Part shown: in pieces, positions 4,747-36,380 of the stretch | How positions within the stretch are numbered: the stretch's first letter is position 1 | Layout: the number at the start of each line of letters is the position of its first letter | IMG/VR virus record: IMGVR_UViG_3300020188_000808 | Coordinates: 62,001-126,000 of that record | Length of the DNA stretch: 64,000 nucleotides | Reading direction: 5' to 3' (one strand) | Made by a program: the position numbers and the translations under genes | Notes under the pieces: model-generated | What the model saw: the letters and a program-made list of their open reading frames with translations, nothing else | Database searches by the model: none | Told to the model about the DNA's origin: nothing

Positions 4747-6558
4747 CTAATTTTTTAATGTTACTAGCTTTTGATATTCAGGTAGATAAAGATATTCGAT
4801 GTCACTATTAGCAAGTGTACGTACTGCATCATCAAGTGTTTCAACTAAAGGCTCGCCACCTAAATTAAAACTTGTATTAAAGATAATACTAATACCTGTG
4901 CGTTCTTTAAATGCTTTAATTACATCATAGTAGTGTTTATTTTGATCTCTATTAACAGTTTGAATACGACATGTTCCGTCAACATGAATAATACTTGGAA
5001 TCTTATCTGCAATGCCGTCTTGGCAGTTTACAGCATACATCATTGTTGGTGAACTTTTCATTCCACGTAGGTCAAACCATTCATGTACATCTTCTTCTAA
5101 AATAGATCCTGCAAACGGACGAAAGTATTCACGTCTTTTAACTTTGTTTACATAATCTTTACCATTAGGATCTGTTGGATCGTACATAATAGTTCTATTA
5201 CCTAATGCACGTGGTCCGTTTTCTGAACGTCCTTGGAATAATGTAACGATTTTTCTATCTACTAATAATTCTACTGCTTTTGCGTTGTCGCAATCTTCAA
5301 CAGTTGCTTCGTATTTTTCTACTACTTTGTTAATATCATCTTCAGAATAACAGTAAGCCGGTCCTTCATATAATGTTTCTTGTTGTTTTTGAACTTTGTT
5401 ACTTTTAGTTAAACGTCTGTGCATTAACATTGCACCGCCCATGGCTGTACCTGCATCGTTACTTACTGGCTCAACATAGATTTCAATTCCGTCATCTTTT
5501 AATGCTTCTAAATAATGATAGTTAGCAACACAGTTAAGTCCATATCCTCCACTAATAACTACTTTATTTTTTCCTGACATTTGAACTGCTTTACGAATTA
5601 ATTTAACAACTTCTTCTTGGCTTTCAGTTTGAATATTATATGCCATGTTGCGTCTATTTTCTAAATAGGTTACGTCTTGCGTTTCTGGATTGTCGCCGTG
5701 GTCAGTTAAGTAAGGGTGCATATTGTAATTAACATGAGCTCCATTAGGATATGTTGGAACAATAACATGTCTATCTGCTTGTGAAGTTAATGTATCATGT
5801 CTAAAGATTTTTGGTGCAGTATCAGCTTTTCCATATGGAAATAGTCCCATAGTCTTGCCTGCTTCAATAAAACTAAATCCACAGTATTCTGTTACTGCCT
5901 CATATGCTTTAACAATTCCAGCATTTTCTGAAATAACTAACTCATGTGTAGCTTCTTTATCTTCGTCATACATTTCACTTGAAAACTCAGGTATCCAAGC
6001 ACCCATTAAAGGACCGTTAGCACCAATGTGCTTGTATAATGTTTTAAAATTGTCAGGATAATTACAATCGTAAATACTTTCAGTTTCCCAAACAGTAGTA
6101 GGTTGCCCGCCAATATCTAATGTAATAAAAGTTCCTGCACCATCTACAATAAGTGCTACTGCATCTTCAAATCCTGAACGATAAAATGCACAAGCCGCAT
6201 GTAACTTGTGATGAATATTTGACATGTCAATTACTTGTGGATGAGATGTACCAGTGTAAGGTAATCTTTTAATTAATCCTAACTTACGTGCAAGACCTGT
6301 ATAAACATCGTCTCCACTAAAGTCTACTTTACCAGCAGTTTGATCTAAATTTTGTGTATGTGCAACAACTAAAAAATCTAATGTATCAGTGTATTCAAGT
6401 ATTTTAACCATACTTGCATATGGCCCGCCATCATACTTTTGTCTAGTTAATCGTTCTTCTTCAATTGAAAAAACAATTTCACCATCTTTTAATAAACATA
6501 CTCCGCCGTTGTGTCCTCTAGCGATTCCTGCAATCCATACTGGCTTTTTAGTTGGCAT
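4747..6558 (-). CDS. O-carbamoyltransferase, NodU/CmcH/TobZ family
   Basis: 603 aa. Motifs EEERLTRQK, HHKLHA, DGAG, GKTMGL, GG..LNCVAN, GPRALGNR, KRREYFRPFA, HVDGTCRIQTV, NTSFN..GEP. Confidence 0.92.
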   Translation of the reverse strand: MPTKKPVWIAGIARGHNGGVCLLKDGEIVFSIEEERLTRQKYDGGPYASMVKILEYTDTLDFLVVAHTQNLDQTAGKVDFSGDDVYTGLARKLGLIKRLPYTGTSHPQVIDMSNIHHKLHAACAFYRSGFEDAVALIVDGAGTFITLDIGGQPTTVWETESIYDCNYPDNFKTLYKHIGANGPLMGAWIPEFSSEMYDEDKEATHELVISENAGIVKAYEAVTEYCGFSFIEAGKTMGLFPYGKADTAPKIFRHDTLTSQADRHVIVPTYPNGAHVNYNMHPYLTDHGDNPETQDVTYLENRRNMAYNIQTESQEEVVKLIRKAVQMSGKNKVVISGGYGLNCVANYHYLEALKDDGIEIYVEPVSNDAGTAMGGAMLMHRRLTKSNKVQKQQETLYEGPAYCYSEDDINKVVEKYEATVEDCDNAKAVELLVDRKIVTLFQGRSENGPRALGNRTIMYDPTDPNGKDYVNKVKRREYFRPFAGSILEEDVHEWFDLRGMKSSPTMMYAVNCQDGIADKIPSIIHVDGTCRIQTVNRDQNKHYYDVIKAFKERTGISIIFNTSFNLGGEPLVETLDDAVRTLANSDIEYLYLPEYQKLVTLKN

Positions 6559-30804: not shown

Positions 30805-31230
30805 TTAGTCTGCTGGATCGTCTGACTCAAAGTCATCAGCATCTGGTGCGCCATCAACGTTGTCGATAACAGCATCATCACCTGCTTCTTCCATTTCAAC
30901 AGTAGCACCTGTACCAGTGAAGTCCCATTTGATCTTATCGCCTGCTCCTTCAAGTTGTACCAAGTGTGCAGTAATCTTAGTTACTTGCTTTGGAGTTGCT
31001 CCGTCTAAGACTGTAATAGTCATTTCGCCTGCCGCAACTGCCGCACTTGCTTTATTAACTAAGAAACAATCTTTTGTAGCTGTACCGTCTGTGCAACGGA
31101 ATTTTTTACTTCCAAGTTGCTTAACAATCCAGCCGTTTACTGATCCAGTTCCATTGTGAAACTGTACTTTAATTTCGTCACCGCCTGCTGTAGGTGGGCC
31201 AAAATATCTTTTGTTTAGTGGTCTTCCCAT
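30805..31230 (-). CDS. Hypothetical late protein (MGRPLNKRYFG...)
   Basis: 141 aa. Strong RBS, late promoter at 31318-31324, acidic tail. Confidence 0.7.
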   Translation of the reverse strand: MGRPLNKRYFGPPTAGGDEIKVQFHNGTGSVNGWIVKQLGSKKFRCTDGTATKDCFLVNKASAAVAAGEMTITVLDGATPKQVTKITAHLVQLEGAGDKIKWDFTGTGATVEMEEAGDDAVIDNVDGAPDADDFESDDPAD

Positions 31231-31328
31231 TTGTTTTCTCCTTTAAAACGTTCTAGGTTTACGCAGTGGGTCAGTTCTGCATAAGTCCGCAACATGCGGC
31301 ACGATTATTGACACAAGTATTTATCTGA

Positions 31329-33479: not shown

Positions 33480-33776
33480 TCACACGCAACCAGTCGGCTT
33501 GGGGAGCCCACCATACTTGGCAATCTGTTTCATTGGACCGGTCTTCCAAGCATCATACAGGCCTTTTGCTTTGCGATCCATGCCCAATGCTTTACCAAAG
33601 TCCTTTACTCGTGGCACCATTGATGTTTCTTCATACATAGAACGTGCTAACATAATGTGGCTTACCTGTTCTTCGGTAAGCGTCTTGTCATCTTCACGAG
33701 CCATAGAGTGCATTACTTCCTCACTCCAATCACTCATTGACACGAGGAATCCGTCACCGTCTCTTTCAATACTCAT
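33480..33776 (-). CDS. tusE: TusE/DsrC-family sulfur relay protein
   Basis: 98 aa. N-terminal DGDGFL...DWSEE and C-terminal GLPKPTGCV with penultimate Cys. Confidence 0.9.
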   Translation of the reverse strand: MSIERDGDGFLVSMSDWSEEVMHSMAREDDKTLTEEQVSHIMLARSMYEETSMVPRVKDFGKALGMDRKAKGLYDAWKTGPMKQIAKYGGLPKPTGCV

Positions 33777-34219: not shown

Positions 34220-34420
34220 CTACTTGACTGATAAGTTTATAGCAGAAGGGCCTTTTGGACCATCCTGTGTTTCAAACTCTACAGTATCGCCTTCATTCAA
34301 CGAGTGTAAGCCTGCGGCTTCTACTGCTGAAATGTGTACGAAGATATCTTTGTCTTCGGTAGCGATAAATCCAAAACCTTTAGTGGCATTGAACCATTTT
34401 ACTTTTCCTTGATTACTCAT
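34220..34420 (-). CDS. cspA: Cold-shock domain protein
   Basis: 66 aa. [15 protein letters not shown] (RNP1) and DIFVHISA (RNP2). Confidence 0.95.
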
Positions 34421-34538
34421 GTTTTTCCTTGTTAGTGTTTATTTTGAGGAAGTTTGTATCTAATATTAGGGCGGGAGGGTTGTTATTTCTACTGCGTCTT
34501 GTTCTTATTACTGTCTTGTCTCAATTGTATTTAGTCAC

Positions 34539-34563
34539 AAAAAAAACTGCATAAAGCAGTTTG
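34539..34563 (-). terminator. Intrinsic terminator
   Basis: AAACTGC-TTTAT-GCAGTTT followed by a T-tract. Confidence 0.75.
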
Positions 34564-34646
34564 GTTTTGTTTAGTTGTTATATGTATTTAGCTGGTCGAC
34601 AAAAAAGGTGCTTATAATAGGTCTTTTTGCGAGTCTAAATTTAAGT

Positions 34647-34861
34647 ATAGCAAAATAGGGAGGACTTGGGTACACCTCCAAGTACGGACCGGAATACCAT
34701 TCCTAAACCGTACAACCTATCCCCGCGGGTTAGTGCGATGTGACTCAGCGTATTTCTACTACCAAGCCTGGGTACCACCCCTGGACAGTCAAGTTCGACC
34801 CTTCTGGTAAAGGCCTCTTCCTTGCACTACAAACAAAAGCTAATTACTCTTTTGTTGCTAT
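34647..34861 (-). ncRNA. Candidate ~215-nt structured non-coding RNA
   Basis: Own sigma70-type promoter. 7-bp 5'/3' closing stem, nested stems with G-U pairs and a GAAA loop. GC-rich, no ORF. Confidence 0.6.
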
Positions 34862-34867
34862 GTAATT

Positions 34868-34896
34868 AATATAACATTGTTATTAACAAAGAGCAA
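34868..34896 (-). promoter_or_regulatory. Sigma70-type promoter for the candidate ncRNA
   Basis: TTGCTC (34896-34891), N17, TATATT (34873-34868). Confidence 0.55.
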
Positions 34897-34936
34897 TCAC
34901 TTTGTTTACCAAAATATATAAAATGGAATTTTAGTC

Positions 34937-34967
34937 ATAAAAAAGCACTCCGGAGAATGCTTTTTAT
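34937..34967. terminator. Intrinsic terminator after pqqA
   Basis: Minus strand AAAAAGCATTC-TCCG-GAGTGCTTTTTT (UNCG loop). Confidence 0.85.
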
Positions 34968-34988
34968 GTTTCAATGTATAAACAAGTA

Positions 34989-35063
34989 TTACTTGTTCAT
35001 TACATACATCGTCACTTCAAATCCAAAACGCATTTCTGTTGCTTGAGGTTTAGTCCATTTCAT
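34989..35063 (-). CDS. pqqA: PQQ precursor peptide PqqA (24 aa)
   Basis: Hand translation MKWTKPQATEMRFGFEVTMYVMNK*. W.KP...R.GFEVTMY with the E-x3-Y motif. RBS AGGAG 6 nt upstream. Confidence 0.9.
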   Translation of the reverse strand: MKWTKPQATEMRFGFEVTMYVMNK

Positions 35064-35153
35064 AATAATCTCCTAATAATATGTGCAACTTGCACACTAT
35101 TATTTAAACATATTACAAAGTAAAAGTCATGCAGATAATCATTAAAAGGTCAT

Positions 35154-35185
35154 AAAAAAAGGGCGACAAATAAATGCCGCCCTTT
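35154..35185 (-). terminator. Major capsid gene terminator
   Basis: AAAGGGCGGC-ATTTATTT-GTCGCCCTTTTTTT. Confidence 0.85.
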
Positions 35186-35210
35186 AATCTTATTCCGTTA
35201 AGACTATGTC

Positions 35211-36380
35211 TTAAGAGAAAGTAGGTGTAGATGTAAAGCTAACTGTACCTAAGTAGTCTGCCGCATTACCTAGAGACGATGCTGTGTTTGACAACTCAAC
35301 ATATCCGTATCTAGTCATAAAGCTAACTACTGGCTCAAAGCTATCTGGATCTAACACTACGCCACTGCTCATTAATGGAATGTATGGGCAGTAGAACGCT
35401 GGTGCGTCTGATTCAGAAGAACCTTTGTAACCAACTAGTACCGCTGTGTCATCTGCCGCGTAACTATCAACATAAACTTTCATAGCTGAATTTAATGTTC
35501 CAACCATTTTAGTGTTTGTTGGTGCTTCGAATGAACCTTCAGTTGTTCTTGCGAACGCTGAAGTAGTTGCACTCTGAAGTACAGTTAACGCTTGTGGAGA
35601 TACCACTGCGTAGTTACCAGCACCACGACGTGTACGCTGAGCAATAACGTTAGCAACACGGTTGATCATTACAGCTAAAGCCGCATGTTCGTCACCAACG
35701 AATGTTGCAGTACCGCTAACAGCAGTCTGATCGTAGTTTTGGTTGTTAGTTGATCCAGCTAATGCACGTAAAGAAGCTAATACTTCTTGGTCGATCTCAG
35801 CAGTAATCTCTTGGGCTAGTGCCGCCATGATTTCTGCTTCGATGTCAATGCCTTGCTGTGCTTGAGCATCTTGAGCCGCTTCAAAAGTCCATCTAGCTGA
35901 TAGCTTTCTGGTTTTTGCTTCGACTGTTTGCTTTAAGATCTGAATTGACAATCTCTTGCCTGCCGCACCTTCAAGAGCCGCTGTTGCAGATCCTTTTGGT
36001 GATGCATCAGTAGCGTTACCTGAGTAAGCCGCCGCGATCTTAAATGGTGATAGTGCTTCTTCACCAACTTCGTTACCATCAGATGTATCTGAGTAACGTA
36101 CTCTTAATGTGTGGATTTGACCCACTGGACCTGTCATAGGCTGTACACCGACCAATTCGTTGGCGATAACAGTTGGCATGACACGTCTGATTACTGGTAG
36201 GATAACTCTATTTAGAGTTGCAACATTACCGGCGCTTGTGCTTCCGGCTGTAGCAGTCTCATTCAACCACTTGCGTGTGTTTTCAAGAGTGCTTGCCATG
36301 ATTGCTTTCTTATTGCCTTGAAGGCCTTCTAAAAGTGCAACCTTGGTATCCTGCCAGCGACTTTCTAGTAGTTCTGACAT
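35211..36380 (-). CDS. gp23: Major capsid protein, T4 gp23-like
   Basis: 389 aa. VIRRVMPTVIANELVGVQPMTGPVGQIHTLR, KTRKLSARWTFEAAQD, FYCPYIPL, FMTRYG. Confidence 0.95.
   Translation of the reverse strand: MSELLESRWQDTKVALLEGLQGNKKAIMASTLENTRKWLNETATAGSTSAGNVATLNRVILPVIRRVMPTVIANELVGVQPMTGPVGQIHTLRVRYSDTSDGNEVGEEALSPFKIAAAYSGNATDASPKGSATAALEGAAGKRLSIQILKQTVEAKTRKLSARWTFEAAQDAQAQQGIDIEAEIMAALAQEITAEIDQEVLASLRALAGSTNNQNYDQTAVSGTATFVGDEHAALAVMINRVANVIAQRTRRGAGNYAVVSPQALTVLQSATTSAFARTTEGSFEAPTNTKMVGTLNSAMKVYVDSYAADDTAVLVGYKGSSESDAPAFYCPYIPLMSSGVVLDPDSFEPVVSFMTRYGYVELSNTASSLGNAADYLGTVSFTSTPTFS

What the first reader, a model, noticed from the sequence alone, without database searches (positions are those of the whole stretch)
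34647..34896. Unrecognised ~215-nt structured RNA with its own host-type promoter
Seen (minus strand): TTGCTC-N17-TATATT. The predicted start ~34861 AUAGCAA pairs with UUGCUAU at 34653-34647. Inner helices UAGUGC/GCACUA (34829-34824/34736-34731), GGCCUUU/AAGGGUC with two G-U pairs, UGACU/AGUCA, GGG/CCC, GUA-GAAA-UAC, GUACGG/CCGUAC enclosing GGAAU/AUUCC, and mutually exclusive ACUUGG/CCAAGU versus GGAGG/CCUCC at the 3' end. No ORF. It does not show the hallmarks of tRNA, tmRNA, RNase P or SRP that I know. Inference: a novel phage ncRNA, possibly an RNAP or protein decoy.
Basis: partly seen in the sequence, partly recalled or inferred. Interest (0 to 1): 0.75.

Follow-up and report, generated by a model that had tools for sequence, protein, structure and literature searches.

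The report
Divergent manA-family phage RNA gene
The structured RNA is real and has its own host-type promoter, but it is not a new kind: it is a divergent copy of the manA RNA motif (Rfam RF01745), a phage RNA known since 2010 whose function is still unknown.

Summary
On the minus strand, TTGCTC-N17-(TG)TTATATT (34896-34868) precedes a ~215-nt, GC-enriched, ORF-free RNA (34861-34647). The interpretation "unrecognised/novel" does not hold. Rfam's manA model (RF01745) matches 34854-34649 end to end (50.3 bits, E 9e-12), just under the 55.2-bit cut-off, which is why the default scan missed it.

- **Family link:** Syntenic copies after gp23 in related viral contigs score 55.5-79.9 bits, and the copy in pelagiphage Mosig scores 64.0. 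A model built only from the window's relatives finds the canonical P-SSM2 manA, which Rfam scores at 181.6 bits.
- **Structure:** Covariation over 70 distinct relatives is strong (80% of cells paired; 52 of 61 pairs show double changes). His outer 5'/3' helix is partly supported. Three others are not supported.
- **New here:** A sigma-70 promoter sits directly at the 5' end in 58 of 61 relatives and in P-SSM2. About 40% of copies are followed within 2-14 nt by a terminator with no detectable antiterminator. Four cyanophage-type copies run straight into a tRNA gene.

I therefore read it as an insulated early small-RNA gene rather than a dedicated leader of the cold-shock gene downstream. Its ligand or partner is unknown. 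It is a new member of a known kind, of modest interest.

The parts
34936..34968 (-). Intrinsic-terminator-like hairpin with a U-run. It ends the upstream gp23/pqqA unit and, together with the promoter, forms a PeSL-like composite terminator/promoter.
   Evidence: dG -14.7 kcal/mol, z = -5.7 against shuffles. The PeSL concept comes from PMC4122927.
34891..34896 (-). -35 hexamer TTGCTC. It is weaker than the TTGACA/TTGACT found in most relatives.
34868..34876 (-). Extended -10 element, TGT + TATATT, 17 nt after the -35 hexamer.
   Evidence: The TGnTATAnT box is conserved at the same distance from the RNA in relatives and in P-SSM2.
34647..34861 (-). manA-class structured RNA. The predicted 5' end is about 34861 (inferred from promoter spacing). 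The Rfam manA match is 34854-34649. The clade-specific outer helix pairs 34859-34855 with 34653-34649.
   Evidence: RF01745: 50.3 bits, E 9.2e-12, model positions 1-192. (model R1: 197.9 bits, the only hit in the window). (the only hit in the 267.8-kb record). Covariation.
34596..34632 (-). Weak AU-rich hairpin followed by U6. It is probably not an efficient terminator.
   Evidence: dG -4.4 kcal/mol, z = -0.1.
34536..34562 (-). First convincing intrinsic terminator downstream of the RNA (hairpin plus U8). It is the likely 3' end of the transcript, giving an RNA of about 300-325 nt.
   Evidence: pattern scan; dG -11.9 kcal/mol, z = -2.7.
34528..34536 (-). GACTAAATA box, resembling a T4-type late promoter, between the terminator and csp. 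This reading is inferred and not statistically supported.
   Evidence: 3 matches in the window against 2.4 expected. GATAAATAC or GACTAAATA stands in the same place in relatives.
34220..34420 (-). Next gene downstream: a 66-aa cold-shock-domain protein (CspE/CspC-like).
   Evidence: PF00313, 86.4 bits. (NCBIfam CspE/CspC-like matches, below the equivalog cut-offs).

Best explanation
**Identity (about 0.9 sure).** The feature is a divergent member of the manA RNA family (Rfam RF01745). This is an 11-helix, multi-branched RNA of marine T4-like phages, first described as an orphan riboswitch candidate.

**Arrangement (shown by sequence and conservation).**
- A terminator closes the gp23/pqqA unit.
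- A sigma-70 promoter with an extended -10 starts transcription right at the base of the fold.
- The first good terminator lies 85 nt after the fold.
- A late-promoter-like box and then the csp gene follow that terminator.

**Mechanism (inferred, about 0.5 sure).** Unmodified host RNA polymerase makes the RNA early in infection as a discrete small RNA. Its compact fold is itself the functional product. I propose that it binds an unknown small molecule or factor. On this reading it is not a dedicated cis-regulator of csp. Where the same module sits 3-100 nt before a gene with no terminator (gp32, rubrerythrin, peroxiredoxin, PurS and others), the gene simply shares its early promoter and may also be modulated by it.

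**Still open.** Neither the ligand or partner nor the transcript ends have been measured.
For: **Identity.**
- The Rfam match covers the full model at E 9.2e-12.
- Syntenic copies after gp23 score 55.5-79.9 bits, and Mosig scores 64.0.
- Model R1, built only from relatives of the window, finds P-SSM2's copy at 60.4 bits. Rfam scores that copy at 181.6 bits.
- The same helices fit both clades. In the window's clade 80.3% of cells pair and 52 of 61 pairs show double changes, with a covariation score of 0.447 against at most 0.128 when partners are slid. In 60 cyanophage-type copies 91.8% of cells pair.
- RNAalifold independently recovers the core helices.
- Sister copies precede mannose-6-phosphate isomerase, Hsp20, transaldolase, phosphomannomutase and PurS genes, the family's published contexts (PMC2864571).

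**Own promoter.**
- 58 of 61 distinct relatives have TTGxxx-N16-18-TAxxxT at a fixed distance from the RNA.
- P-SSM2 has TTGACA-N17-TATAAT in the same place.

**Autonomy.**
- 25 distinct relatives have a canonical terminator at a median of 6 nt after the RNA.
- The terminator's 5' arm is no more complementary to the RNA than shuffled arms are (mean z = -0.13).
- The hairpin forms with probability 0.96 in the full-length context.
- Many of these terminators are followed by a late-promoter-like box, the freshwater-2 RNA and then the next gene.
- In four cyanophage-type copies a tRNA gene starts between -5 and +10 nt from the end of the RNA match on the same strand. RNase P would therefore release manA as a separate molecule.
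- In the window, terminators flank the unit on both sides.
Against: - The window's own score (50.3 bits) is under Rfam's gathering cut-off (55.2).
- The conserved CUGAAUAAACUU internal loop of the consensus is largely replaced in the window's copy.
- Many family members sit 3-40 nt before a start codon with no terminator. That is the classic riboswitch-leader layout.
- GNRA tetraloops and invariant junction bases suggest an aptamer-like tertiary fold. That fits a cis-acting sensor as well as a free RNA.
- The terminators' 3' arms show slight excess complementarity to the RNA (mean z = -0.64, with four to six loci near or below -2).
- In the window itself the terminator is 85 nt away, not adjacent, so read-through into csp is possible.
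- Metatranscriptome contigs cover the locus but give neither strand nor transcript ends.
- No transcript, ligand or partner has been measured.
Confidence: 0.6

Rival explanations
1. It is a classical cis-acting riboswitch or leader. The manA fold binds a metabolite and sets how much transcription or translation reaches the downstream genes (here csp, an 89-aa ORF and a DsrC-like gene). The terminators are its expression platform.
For: - Weinberg et al. 2010 classed manA as cis-regulatory and probably a switch.
- Many copies end 3-40 nt before a start codon with no terminator: gp32 in 25 of about 117 copies, plus rubrerythrin, peroxiredoxin, PurS and Man-6-P isomerase.
- The fold is complex, with a GNRA tetraloop and invariant junction bases.
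- The downstream gene examined in every locus lies on the RNA's strand, though the scripts searched that strand only.
Against: - No antiterminator pairing is detectable at 25 adjacent terminators, which are strong, self-contained and variable in sequence.
- Those terminators are followed by separate late-promoter-like boxes and by late-looking genes.
- tRNA genes directly follow four copies.
- The downstream genes are functionally very heterogeneous.
- No ligand turned up in the papers searched, 16 years after the motif was described.
- In the window, 85 nt and a weak hairpin lie between the fold and the terminator.
Confidence: 0.3
2. It is a passive 5' module of a mobile early-promoter cassette. 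The fold only protects or processes the 5' end of early transcripts (base-paired 5' end, defence against RNases). It travels with PeSL-like terminator/promoter elements and senses nothing.
For: - The RNA always starts at a strong sigma-70 promoter, which is often embedded in or preceded by a stem-loop, as in PeSLs (PMC4122927).
- The 5' end is paired to the 3' tail in two clades.
- The module occurs at many unrelated genomic sites.
Against: - Eleven helices and many invariant unpaired bases, conserved across distant clades, are far more than 5' end protection needs.
- The copies that end in a terminator protect no downstream message.
Confidence: 0.08
3. It is a new, undescribed phage ncRNA family acting as an RNA polymerase decoy like 6S RNA.
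For: - It has its own promoter, no ORF and strong structure.
- Rfam's default thresholds report nothing at this locus.
Against: - It gives a full-length manA match at E 9e-12, and its orthologs score above the cut-off.
- The link to the canonical P-SSM2 copy holds in both directions: model R1 finds it and Rfam scores it as manA.
- The branched fold has no long duplex with a central bubble, and there is no 6S match.
Confidence: 0.02

Closest known systems
manA RNA motif (Rfam RF01745; Weinberg et al. 2010, PMC2864571)
   Same: - It has the same 11-helix architecture, aligned to model positions 1-192.
- It keeps the conserved GUG junction, the GGUGGU-type hairpin loop, and the 3' hairpin plus closing helix.
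- It occurs in marine T4-like phages.
- Sister copies precede mannose-6-phosphate isomerase, Hsp20, transaldolase and purine genes.
- It has the same sigma-70 promoter at the 5' end as the P-SSM2 copy.
   Different: - Its score is 5 bits under the gathering cut-off.
- The CUGAAUAAACUU internal loop is replaced.
- It has an extra 5'/3' outer helix.
- The host phage is a gp23-type virus record of 267.8 kb from a salt marsh that carries PqqA, not a cyanophage.
- It lies after the major capsid gene.
- It is separated from the next gene (csp) by a terminator.
Small stable RNAs C and D of the phage T4 tRNA cluster (from memory, not checked here)
   Same: Both are phage-encoded stable RNAs of unknown function. 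Like some manA copies, they are co-transcribed with tRNA genes and released by tRNA processing.
   Different: No sequence or structure relation was tested. The T4 RNAs are shorter. The window's copy is not next to a tRNA.
PeSL composite terminator/promoter cassettes of T4-like phages (PMC2839356, PMC4122927)
   Same: A stem-loop terminator joined to an early sigma-70 promoter stands immediately upstream. Both are associated with variable, shuffled genome segments.
   Different: PeSLs are short regulatory cassettes. Here the cassette drives a 200-nt conserved RNA. No PeSL membership test (recombination junctions) was done.
Glutamine riboswitch (RF01739) and freshwater-2 RNA (RF02980)
   Same: These are neighbours in the same RNA island after gp23 in related contigs. 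freshwater-2 is also present in the window at 31228-31301.
   Different: Their folds are unrelated. The glutamine riboswitch has a known ligand. No glutamine riboswitch is detected in the window.
6S RNA (RNA polymerase decoy)
   Same: Both are small non-coding RNAs with their own promoter.
   Different: The window's RNA has no rod-with-bubble fold and gives no Rfam match. It is a resemblance in idea only.

Membership tests
manA RNA (RF01745) | Statistically significant, end-to-end match to the family covariance model | tested here: met
   model positions 1-192 of 192, 50.3 bits, E 9.2e-12 for the 901-nt search. Scaled by eye to the whole window, the E-value is still about 1e-9.
manA RNA (RF01745) | Score at or above Rfam's curated gathering cut-off (55.2 bits) | tested here: inconclusive
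   The window's copy scores 50.3 bits, so it is absent from the default scan. Syntenic orthologs score 79.9, 79.3, 78.6, 64.0, 56.4, 55.7 and 55.5 bits, and others 69.2, 67.5 and 55.9. The cut-off is an operational threshold, not a biological feature.
manA RNA (RF01745) | All consensus helices present: 5' hairpin, long-range closing helix, and the nested three-hairpin domain | tested here: met
   every helix can be written on the window sequence. One or two mismatched terminal pairs occur in four helices.
manA RNA (RF01745) | Helices supported by compensatory changes among homologs | tested here: met
   80.3% of cells pair against 60.3% in shuffles. 52 of 61 pairs show double changes. The covariation score is 0.447 against at most 0.128 when partners are slid. 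One search shows the same structure on 60 cyanophage-type copies, with 91.8% of cells paired.
manA RNA (RF01745) | Homology to a canonical member, shown in both directions | tested here: met
   Model R1, built from the window's relatives only, hits P-SSM2 at 142828-143038 with 60.4 bits. Rfam scores that site at 181.6 bits.
manA RNA (RF01745) | Conserved unpaired nucleotides of the consensus | tested here: inconclusive
   the GUG junction, the GGUGGU loop, the ACC loop and the GGU...AGUCC hairpin are kept. The CUGAAUAAACUU internal loop is mostly replaced by AAGGAAGAG.
manA RNA (RF01745) | Taxonomic and gene context: marine T4-like phages, upstream of mannose/fructose, nucleotide, ibpA-type or photosynthesis genes | tested here: met
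   The RNA lies after a gp23-type capsid gene. Sister copies precede Man-6-P isomerase, Hsp20, transaldolase, phosphomannomutase and PurS genes. The window's own downstream gene is csp, a context not listed in the original description.
Riboswitch (generic) | Expression platform whose pairing competes with the aptamer | tested here: not met
   at 25 adjacent terminators the 5' arm is no more complementary to the RNA than shuffled arms (mean z = -0.13), and the terminator forms with probability 0.96. This was tested for terminator-type copies only. Translational platforms were inspected only by eye.
Riboswitch (generic) | Specific ligand binding | not testable with these tools
   This needs in-line probing or ITC. 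No ligand turned up in the papers searched.
6S RNA / RNAP decoy | Long imperfect duplex with a central open-promoter-like bubble, and a match to the 6S models | tested here: not met
   The fold is branched, with six branch points. No 6S match appears even at E up to 10.
tRNA, tmRNA, RNase P RNA, SRP RNA | Detection by ARAGORN or by Rfam models | tested here: not met
   no tRNA or tmRNA in the window; no such Rfam match.

The most novel reading that the evidence does not exclude
manA RNAs as a family may not be cis-regulatory riboswitches. They may be autonomous early small-RNA genes of marine T4-like phages. On this reading, each is a promoter-RNA-terminator (or RNA-tRNA) cassette, its fold binds a host or phage factor or metabolite in trans, and downstream genes merely borrow its promoter in many genomes. 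That would change Rfam's 'Cis-reg' label for the family. It would also give these phages a conserved trans-acting RNA of unknown target.
Probability: 0.4. Interest if true: 0.55.

Novelty: new member of a known kind. Interest (0 to 1): 0.33.

Why it matters
On its own the locus is ordinary. It is one more, slightly sub-threshold copy of a motif catalogued in 2010.

Three things make it useful.
- **Wider range of the family.** The family extends beyond cyanophages. It occurs in a pelagiphage (Mosig), in many gp23-type viral contigs, and in a 267.8-kb salt-marsh virus record that also carries PqqA, a cold-shock protein and a DsrC-like gene. Published pelagimyophage surveys that used Riboswitch Scanner reported no such RNAs (PMC7029224).
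- **A handle on function.** The conserved promoter, the adjacent constitutive-looking terminators and the tRNA fusions offer a concrete way to ask whether this long-standing orphan acts in cis or in trans.
- **An RNA island.** The site after the major capsid gene repeatedly carries several RNAs (glutamine riboswitch, manA, freshwater-2, sometimes tmRNA). Annotation pipelines and ARAGORN can mis-merge them.

Tried and rejected
- **Default Rfam scan of the whole window.** It found only freshwater-2. The manA match appeared only in E-value mode.
- **The genome search with RF01745 on the window's own record.** It found nothing, and its controls were silent too, so the result is uninformative. My own model R1 worked.
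- **Single-sequence MFE.** z = -1.0, not informative.
- **blastn of the RNA against phage records.** It found only Mosig. Sequence search alone cannot reach the cyanophage copies.
- **Metatranscriptome runs.** Six salt-marsh RNA runs hold the locus. Of the four runs laid, only assembled contigs are kept, with no strand and a flat depth per contig. Summed depth is 115-224 over most of the RNA (59-224 across all the bins that touch it) against 430-900 over gp23. Contig breaks at 34649 in two runs may reflect strain variation. I draw no conclusion on transcript ends.
UAGUGC/GCACUA and UGACU/AGUCA are rejected, and ACUUGG/CCAAGU is unsupported.
- **Scan for an extra covarying pseudoknot.** Nothing appeared beyond the model helices. 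Invariant bases cannot reveal one.
- **Enrichment of the late-promoter-like box and of sigma-70 patterns in the window.** Neither is significant.
- **An SD-sequestering platform in leader-type copies.** I inspected the sequences printed by eye. One suggestive pairing exists in Mosig, but nothing is general.
- **Literature search for a manA ligand or function.** Nothing beyond the 2010 description and genome-annotation mentions. One search was swamped by unrelated hits.

Full report
**What is at the locus.**
- Read on the minus strand, the region holds TTGCTC (34896-34891), a 17-nt spacer and TATATT (34873-34868). The -10 box is preceded by TG, so it is an extended -10.
- About 7 nt further on, at 34861, a stretch of roughly 215 nt begins. 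Its GC content is 0.43-0.47, against 0.29-0.35 in the flanking intergenic DNA.
- The ORFs listed here are short. The longest on the RNA strand, a 45-codon GTG frame at 34641-34778, is not conserved. In relatives its start is lost or stops fall at varying positions.
- ARAGORN finds no tRNA or tmRNA anywhere in the window.

**What it is.**
- Rfam's default thresholds report only a freshwater-2 RNA at 31228-31301.
- In E-value mode on 34300-35200, the manA model RF01745 matches 34854-34649 over all 192 model positions. The score is 50.3 bits and the E-value 9.2e-12, against a gathering cut-off of 55.2 bits. All other matches there are noise (E 0.16 or worse).
- manA was described by Weinberg et al. 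(2010, PMC2864571). It occurs in marine metagenomes, T4-like cyanophages and two gamma-proteobacteria. It was rated certainly an RNA, cis-regulatory and probably a riboswitch.
- I found no ligand or experimental work in the paper library. The later mentions read there are genome annotation, for example S-CREM1 (PMC9964418).

**Genomic setting.**
- The window lies in a 267.8-kb linear IMG/VR virus record.
- The RNA follows the gp23-type major capsid gene at 35211-36380 (PF07068).
- A 24-codon PqqA gene sits at 34989-35063.
- A strong terminator hairpin at 34968-34936 closes that unit.
- Downstream of the RNA come, in order:
  - a weak AU hairpin with U6 (34632-34596, not significant);
  - a good terminator at 34562-34536 (dG -11.9, z = -2.7);
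  - a GACTAAATA box;
  - a CspE-like cold-shock gene at 34420-34220;
  - an 89-aa ORF;
  - a DsrC/TusE-like gene.

**Homologs and the family link.**
- blastn of the RNA against phage records finds only Pelagibacter phage Mosig (75% identity). The site is unannotated there and lies just before a rubrerythrin gene.
- A search with the capsid protein fetched 80 viral contigs. Iterated nhmmer found the RNA at the same place after gp23 in 28 of them.
- Rfam at its own cut-off calls manA in seven of the 20 loci tested: 79.9, 79.3, 78.6, 64.0 (Mosig), 56.4, 55.7 and 55.5 bits.
- I aligned 24 copies, wrote the manA structure on the alignment and built model R1.
- R1 finds exactly one copy in the window (197.9 bits) and one in the whole record.
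- After a pattern scan of viral contigs, R1 found 76 more matches.
- R1 contains no cyanophage sequence, yet it finds P-SSM2's copy at 60.4 bits. Rfam scores that copy at 181.6 bits.
- R1 also finds 60 further cyanophage-type copies fetched with a consensus pattern.
- Homology to manA is thus shown in both directions.

**Structure.**
- On 70 distinct relatives, 80.3% of cells form standard pairs, against 60.3% in shuffles.
- 52 of 61 pairs show changes on both sides. The covariation score is 0.447, against at most 0.128 when partners are slid by 1-3 columns.
- Helix P3 pairs in 99.5% of cells and P5 in 100%.
- The same structure fits the cyanophage clade, with 91.8% of cells paired and 40 of 60 pairs showing double changes.
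- RNAalifold independently recovers P2a, P3, P3a, the tip of P3b, P4 and P5.
- His outer helix (AGCAA/UUGCU) lies outside the Rfam model. It is kept with compensatory changes in two clades and absent in a third.
- His UAGUGC/GCACUA, UGACU/AGUCA and ACUUGG/CCAAGU pairings are not supported.
- A scan for further covarying stacks found no pseudoknot.

**Promoter.**
- 58 of 61 distinct relatives carry TTGxxx-N16-18-TAxxxT at a fixed distance from the 5' hairpin. It is mostly TTGACA or TTGACT, usually with a TG extension and an A-rich upstream tract.
- P-SSM2 has TTGACA-N17-TATAAT ending 6 nt before its 5' hairpin.
- Most cyanophage-type copies have the same box. It often sits in a stem-loop whose loop holds the -35 hexamer.
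- That is the composite terminator/promoter layout described as PeSL in T4-like phages (PMC4122927).
- The window's -35 (TTGCTC) is weak, but its extended -10 is intact.

**What follows the RNA elsewhere.** Three layouts recur.

1. *A canonical GC-rich terminator follows.*
   - It lies 2-14 nt after the RNA (25 distinct loci, median gap 6 nt).
   - In many loci it is followed by a GATAAATAC box, the freshwater-2 RNA and a conserved gene of unknown function. In others the next gene is a fibre-like protein or a Man-6-P-isomerase/cytidylyltransferase gene.
   - Terminator sequences vary freely. Their 5' arms are no more complementary to the RNA than shuffled arms (mean z = -0.13; 3' arms -0.64).
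   - The terminators form with probability 0.96 in the full-length context. I see no antiterminator.
2. *No terminator, and a start codon 3-100 nt downstream.*
   - gp32 is the most frequent partner: 10 of 61 copies in the window's clade and 15 of 56 in the cyanophage clade.
   - Other partners are rubrerythrin, peroxiredoxin, Hsp20, transaldolase, phosphomannomutase, PurS, Man-6-P isomerase and a radical-SAM/SPASM protein.
3. *A tRNA gene follows directly.* In four cyanophage-type copies it starts between -5 and +10 nt from the end of the RNA match on the same strand. In one contig a permuted tmRNA stands directly upstream.

**How it most likely works.**
- *Shown.* The fold is conserved, the promoter is conserved, and in the window the unit is insulated by terminators on both sides.
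- *Inferred.* Selection maintains the fold in many lineages where a constitutive-looking terminator or a tRNA follows it. The RNA must therefore have a function that does not depend on a downstream cistron. I read it as an early small-RNA gene whose compact fold binds something still unknown. The fold carries a GNRA tetraloop and invariant junction bases.
- In leader-type contexts the downstream early genes share its promoter and may be modulated by it.
- I put about 0.5 on this reading, about 0.3 on a classical cis-acting riboswitch, and little on a passive 5' protective module.
- For the window itself, read-through into csp cannot be excluded. The first good terminator is 85 nt past the fold.

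**Transcription data.**
- Six salt-marsh metatranscriptome runs hold the locus.
- Only assembled contigs are kept for the four runs laid, without strand.
- Depth is continuous across genes and spacers. It is 115-224 over most of the RNA (59-224 across all the bins that touch it) and 430-900 over gp23.
- This fits with the locus being present in RNA libraries. It settles neither the transcript ends nor even that the signal is RNA.

**Verdict.**
- The feature is real and is a structured RNA with its own promoter.
- It is a divergent manA-family member, so it is not novel as a kind.
- The added value lies in three points: the family reaches beyond cyanophages, the promoter is conserved, and there is comparative evidence that many copies are stand-alone transcription units.

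Noticed in passing
window 34989-35063 (-): A 24-codon ORF with an AGGAG ribosome-binding site encodes a PqqA precursor peptide (PF08042, 43.8 bits against a cut-off of 21.1; TIGR02107, 39.1 bits against 20). It lies right after the major capsid gene. A phage-borne PQQ precursor hints at a PQQ-dependent host, for example a methylotroph. I did not look for other pqq genes in the record.
   Followed up: partly
window 31228-31301 (-): A freshwater-2 RNA (RF02980, 51.5 bits) lies just upstream of the 141-aa ORF at 30805-31230. In related contigs the same motif sits about 70 nt after manA, behind a terminator and a GATAAATAC box. In the window about 3.3 kb of genes (csp, DsrC-like and others) lie between the two RNAs.
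   Followed up: partly
window 33480-33776 (-) and 34220-34420 (-): These are a DsrC/TusE-family sulfur-relay protein (PF04358; TIGR03342, 68.8 bits) and a CspE/CspC-like cold-shock protein. They look like auxiliary genes sitting inside the late structural region.
   Followed up: partly
L003, L020, L025, L032, L036, L043, L052 (between gp23 and manA): Glutamine riboswitches (RF01739, 43-60 bits) are followed by small ORFs at the spot where the window has PqqA. The site after the capsid gene is a hot spot for small genes and RNAs. The order is glutamine riboswitch, manA, freshwater-2.
   Followed up: partly
L146:5282-5854: ARAGORN calls a permuted tmRNA that swallows the adjacent manA RNA (5624-5830). 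It places an atypical tag peptide inside manA. Rfam puts the complete permuted tmRNA at 5322-5569. This may be an over-extension. It may bear on the published claim that Melnitz carries a tmRNA with a glutamine riboswitch in its 3' domain (PMC9004378).
   Followed up: no
L262:3000-3072, L242:2877-2951, L214:344-417, L230:2344-2414: tRNA-Asn or tRNA-Gly genes start within -5 to +10 nt of the end of the cyanophage-type manA match, on the same strand. This implies co-transcription and release of manA by tRNA processing.
   Followed up: partly
for example L257, L273, L222, L265 (first 45 nt after manA): A conserved long hairpin, AGACCUAAGAUGCAACU...GGGGCAGAKGGUCU plus a U-run, follows many cyanophage-type manA copies. 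I did not run these loci against Rfam. It may be a conserved terminator or a separate motif.
   Followed up: no
L122, L135, L094, L145 (100-230 nt after manA), L120 (upstream): A conserved structured stretch lies before Hsp20 or a 65-aa ORF. It has two hairpins and then CUUGCUU...AAGGAG, which recalls ROSE-type heat-shock thermometers. L122 and L120 gave no Rfam match there at E up to 0.001. The other loci were not scanned.
   Followed up: no
25 of about 117 manA copies (for example L107:1264-2175, L231:1606-2523): The single-strand DNA-binding protein gene gp32 (PF08804) is the most frequent gene directly downstream of manA in both clades. It is reached through a 20-100-nt A/C-rich, apparently unstructured leader. 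The passage of the original description that I read does not list this context.
   Followed up: partly
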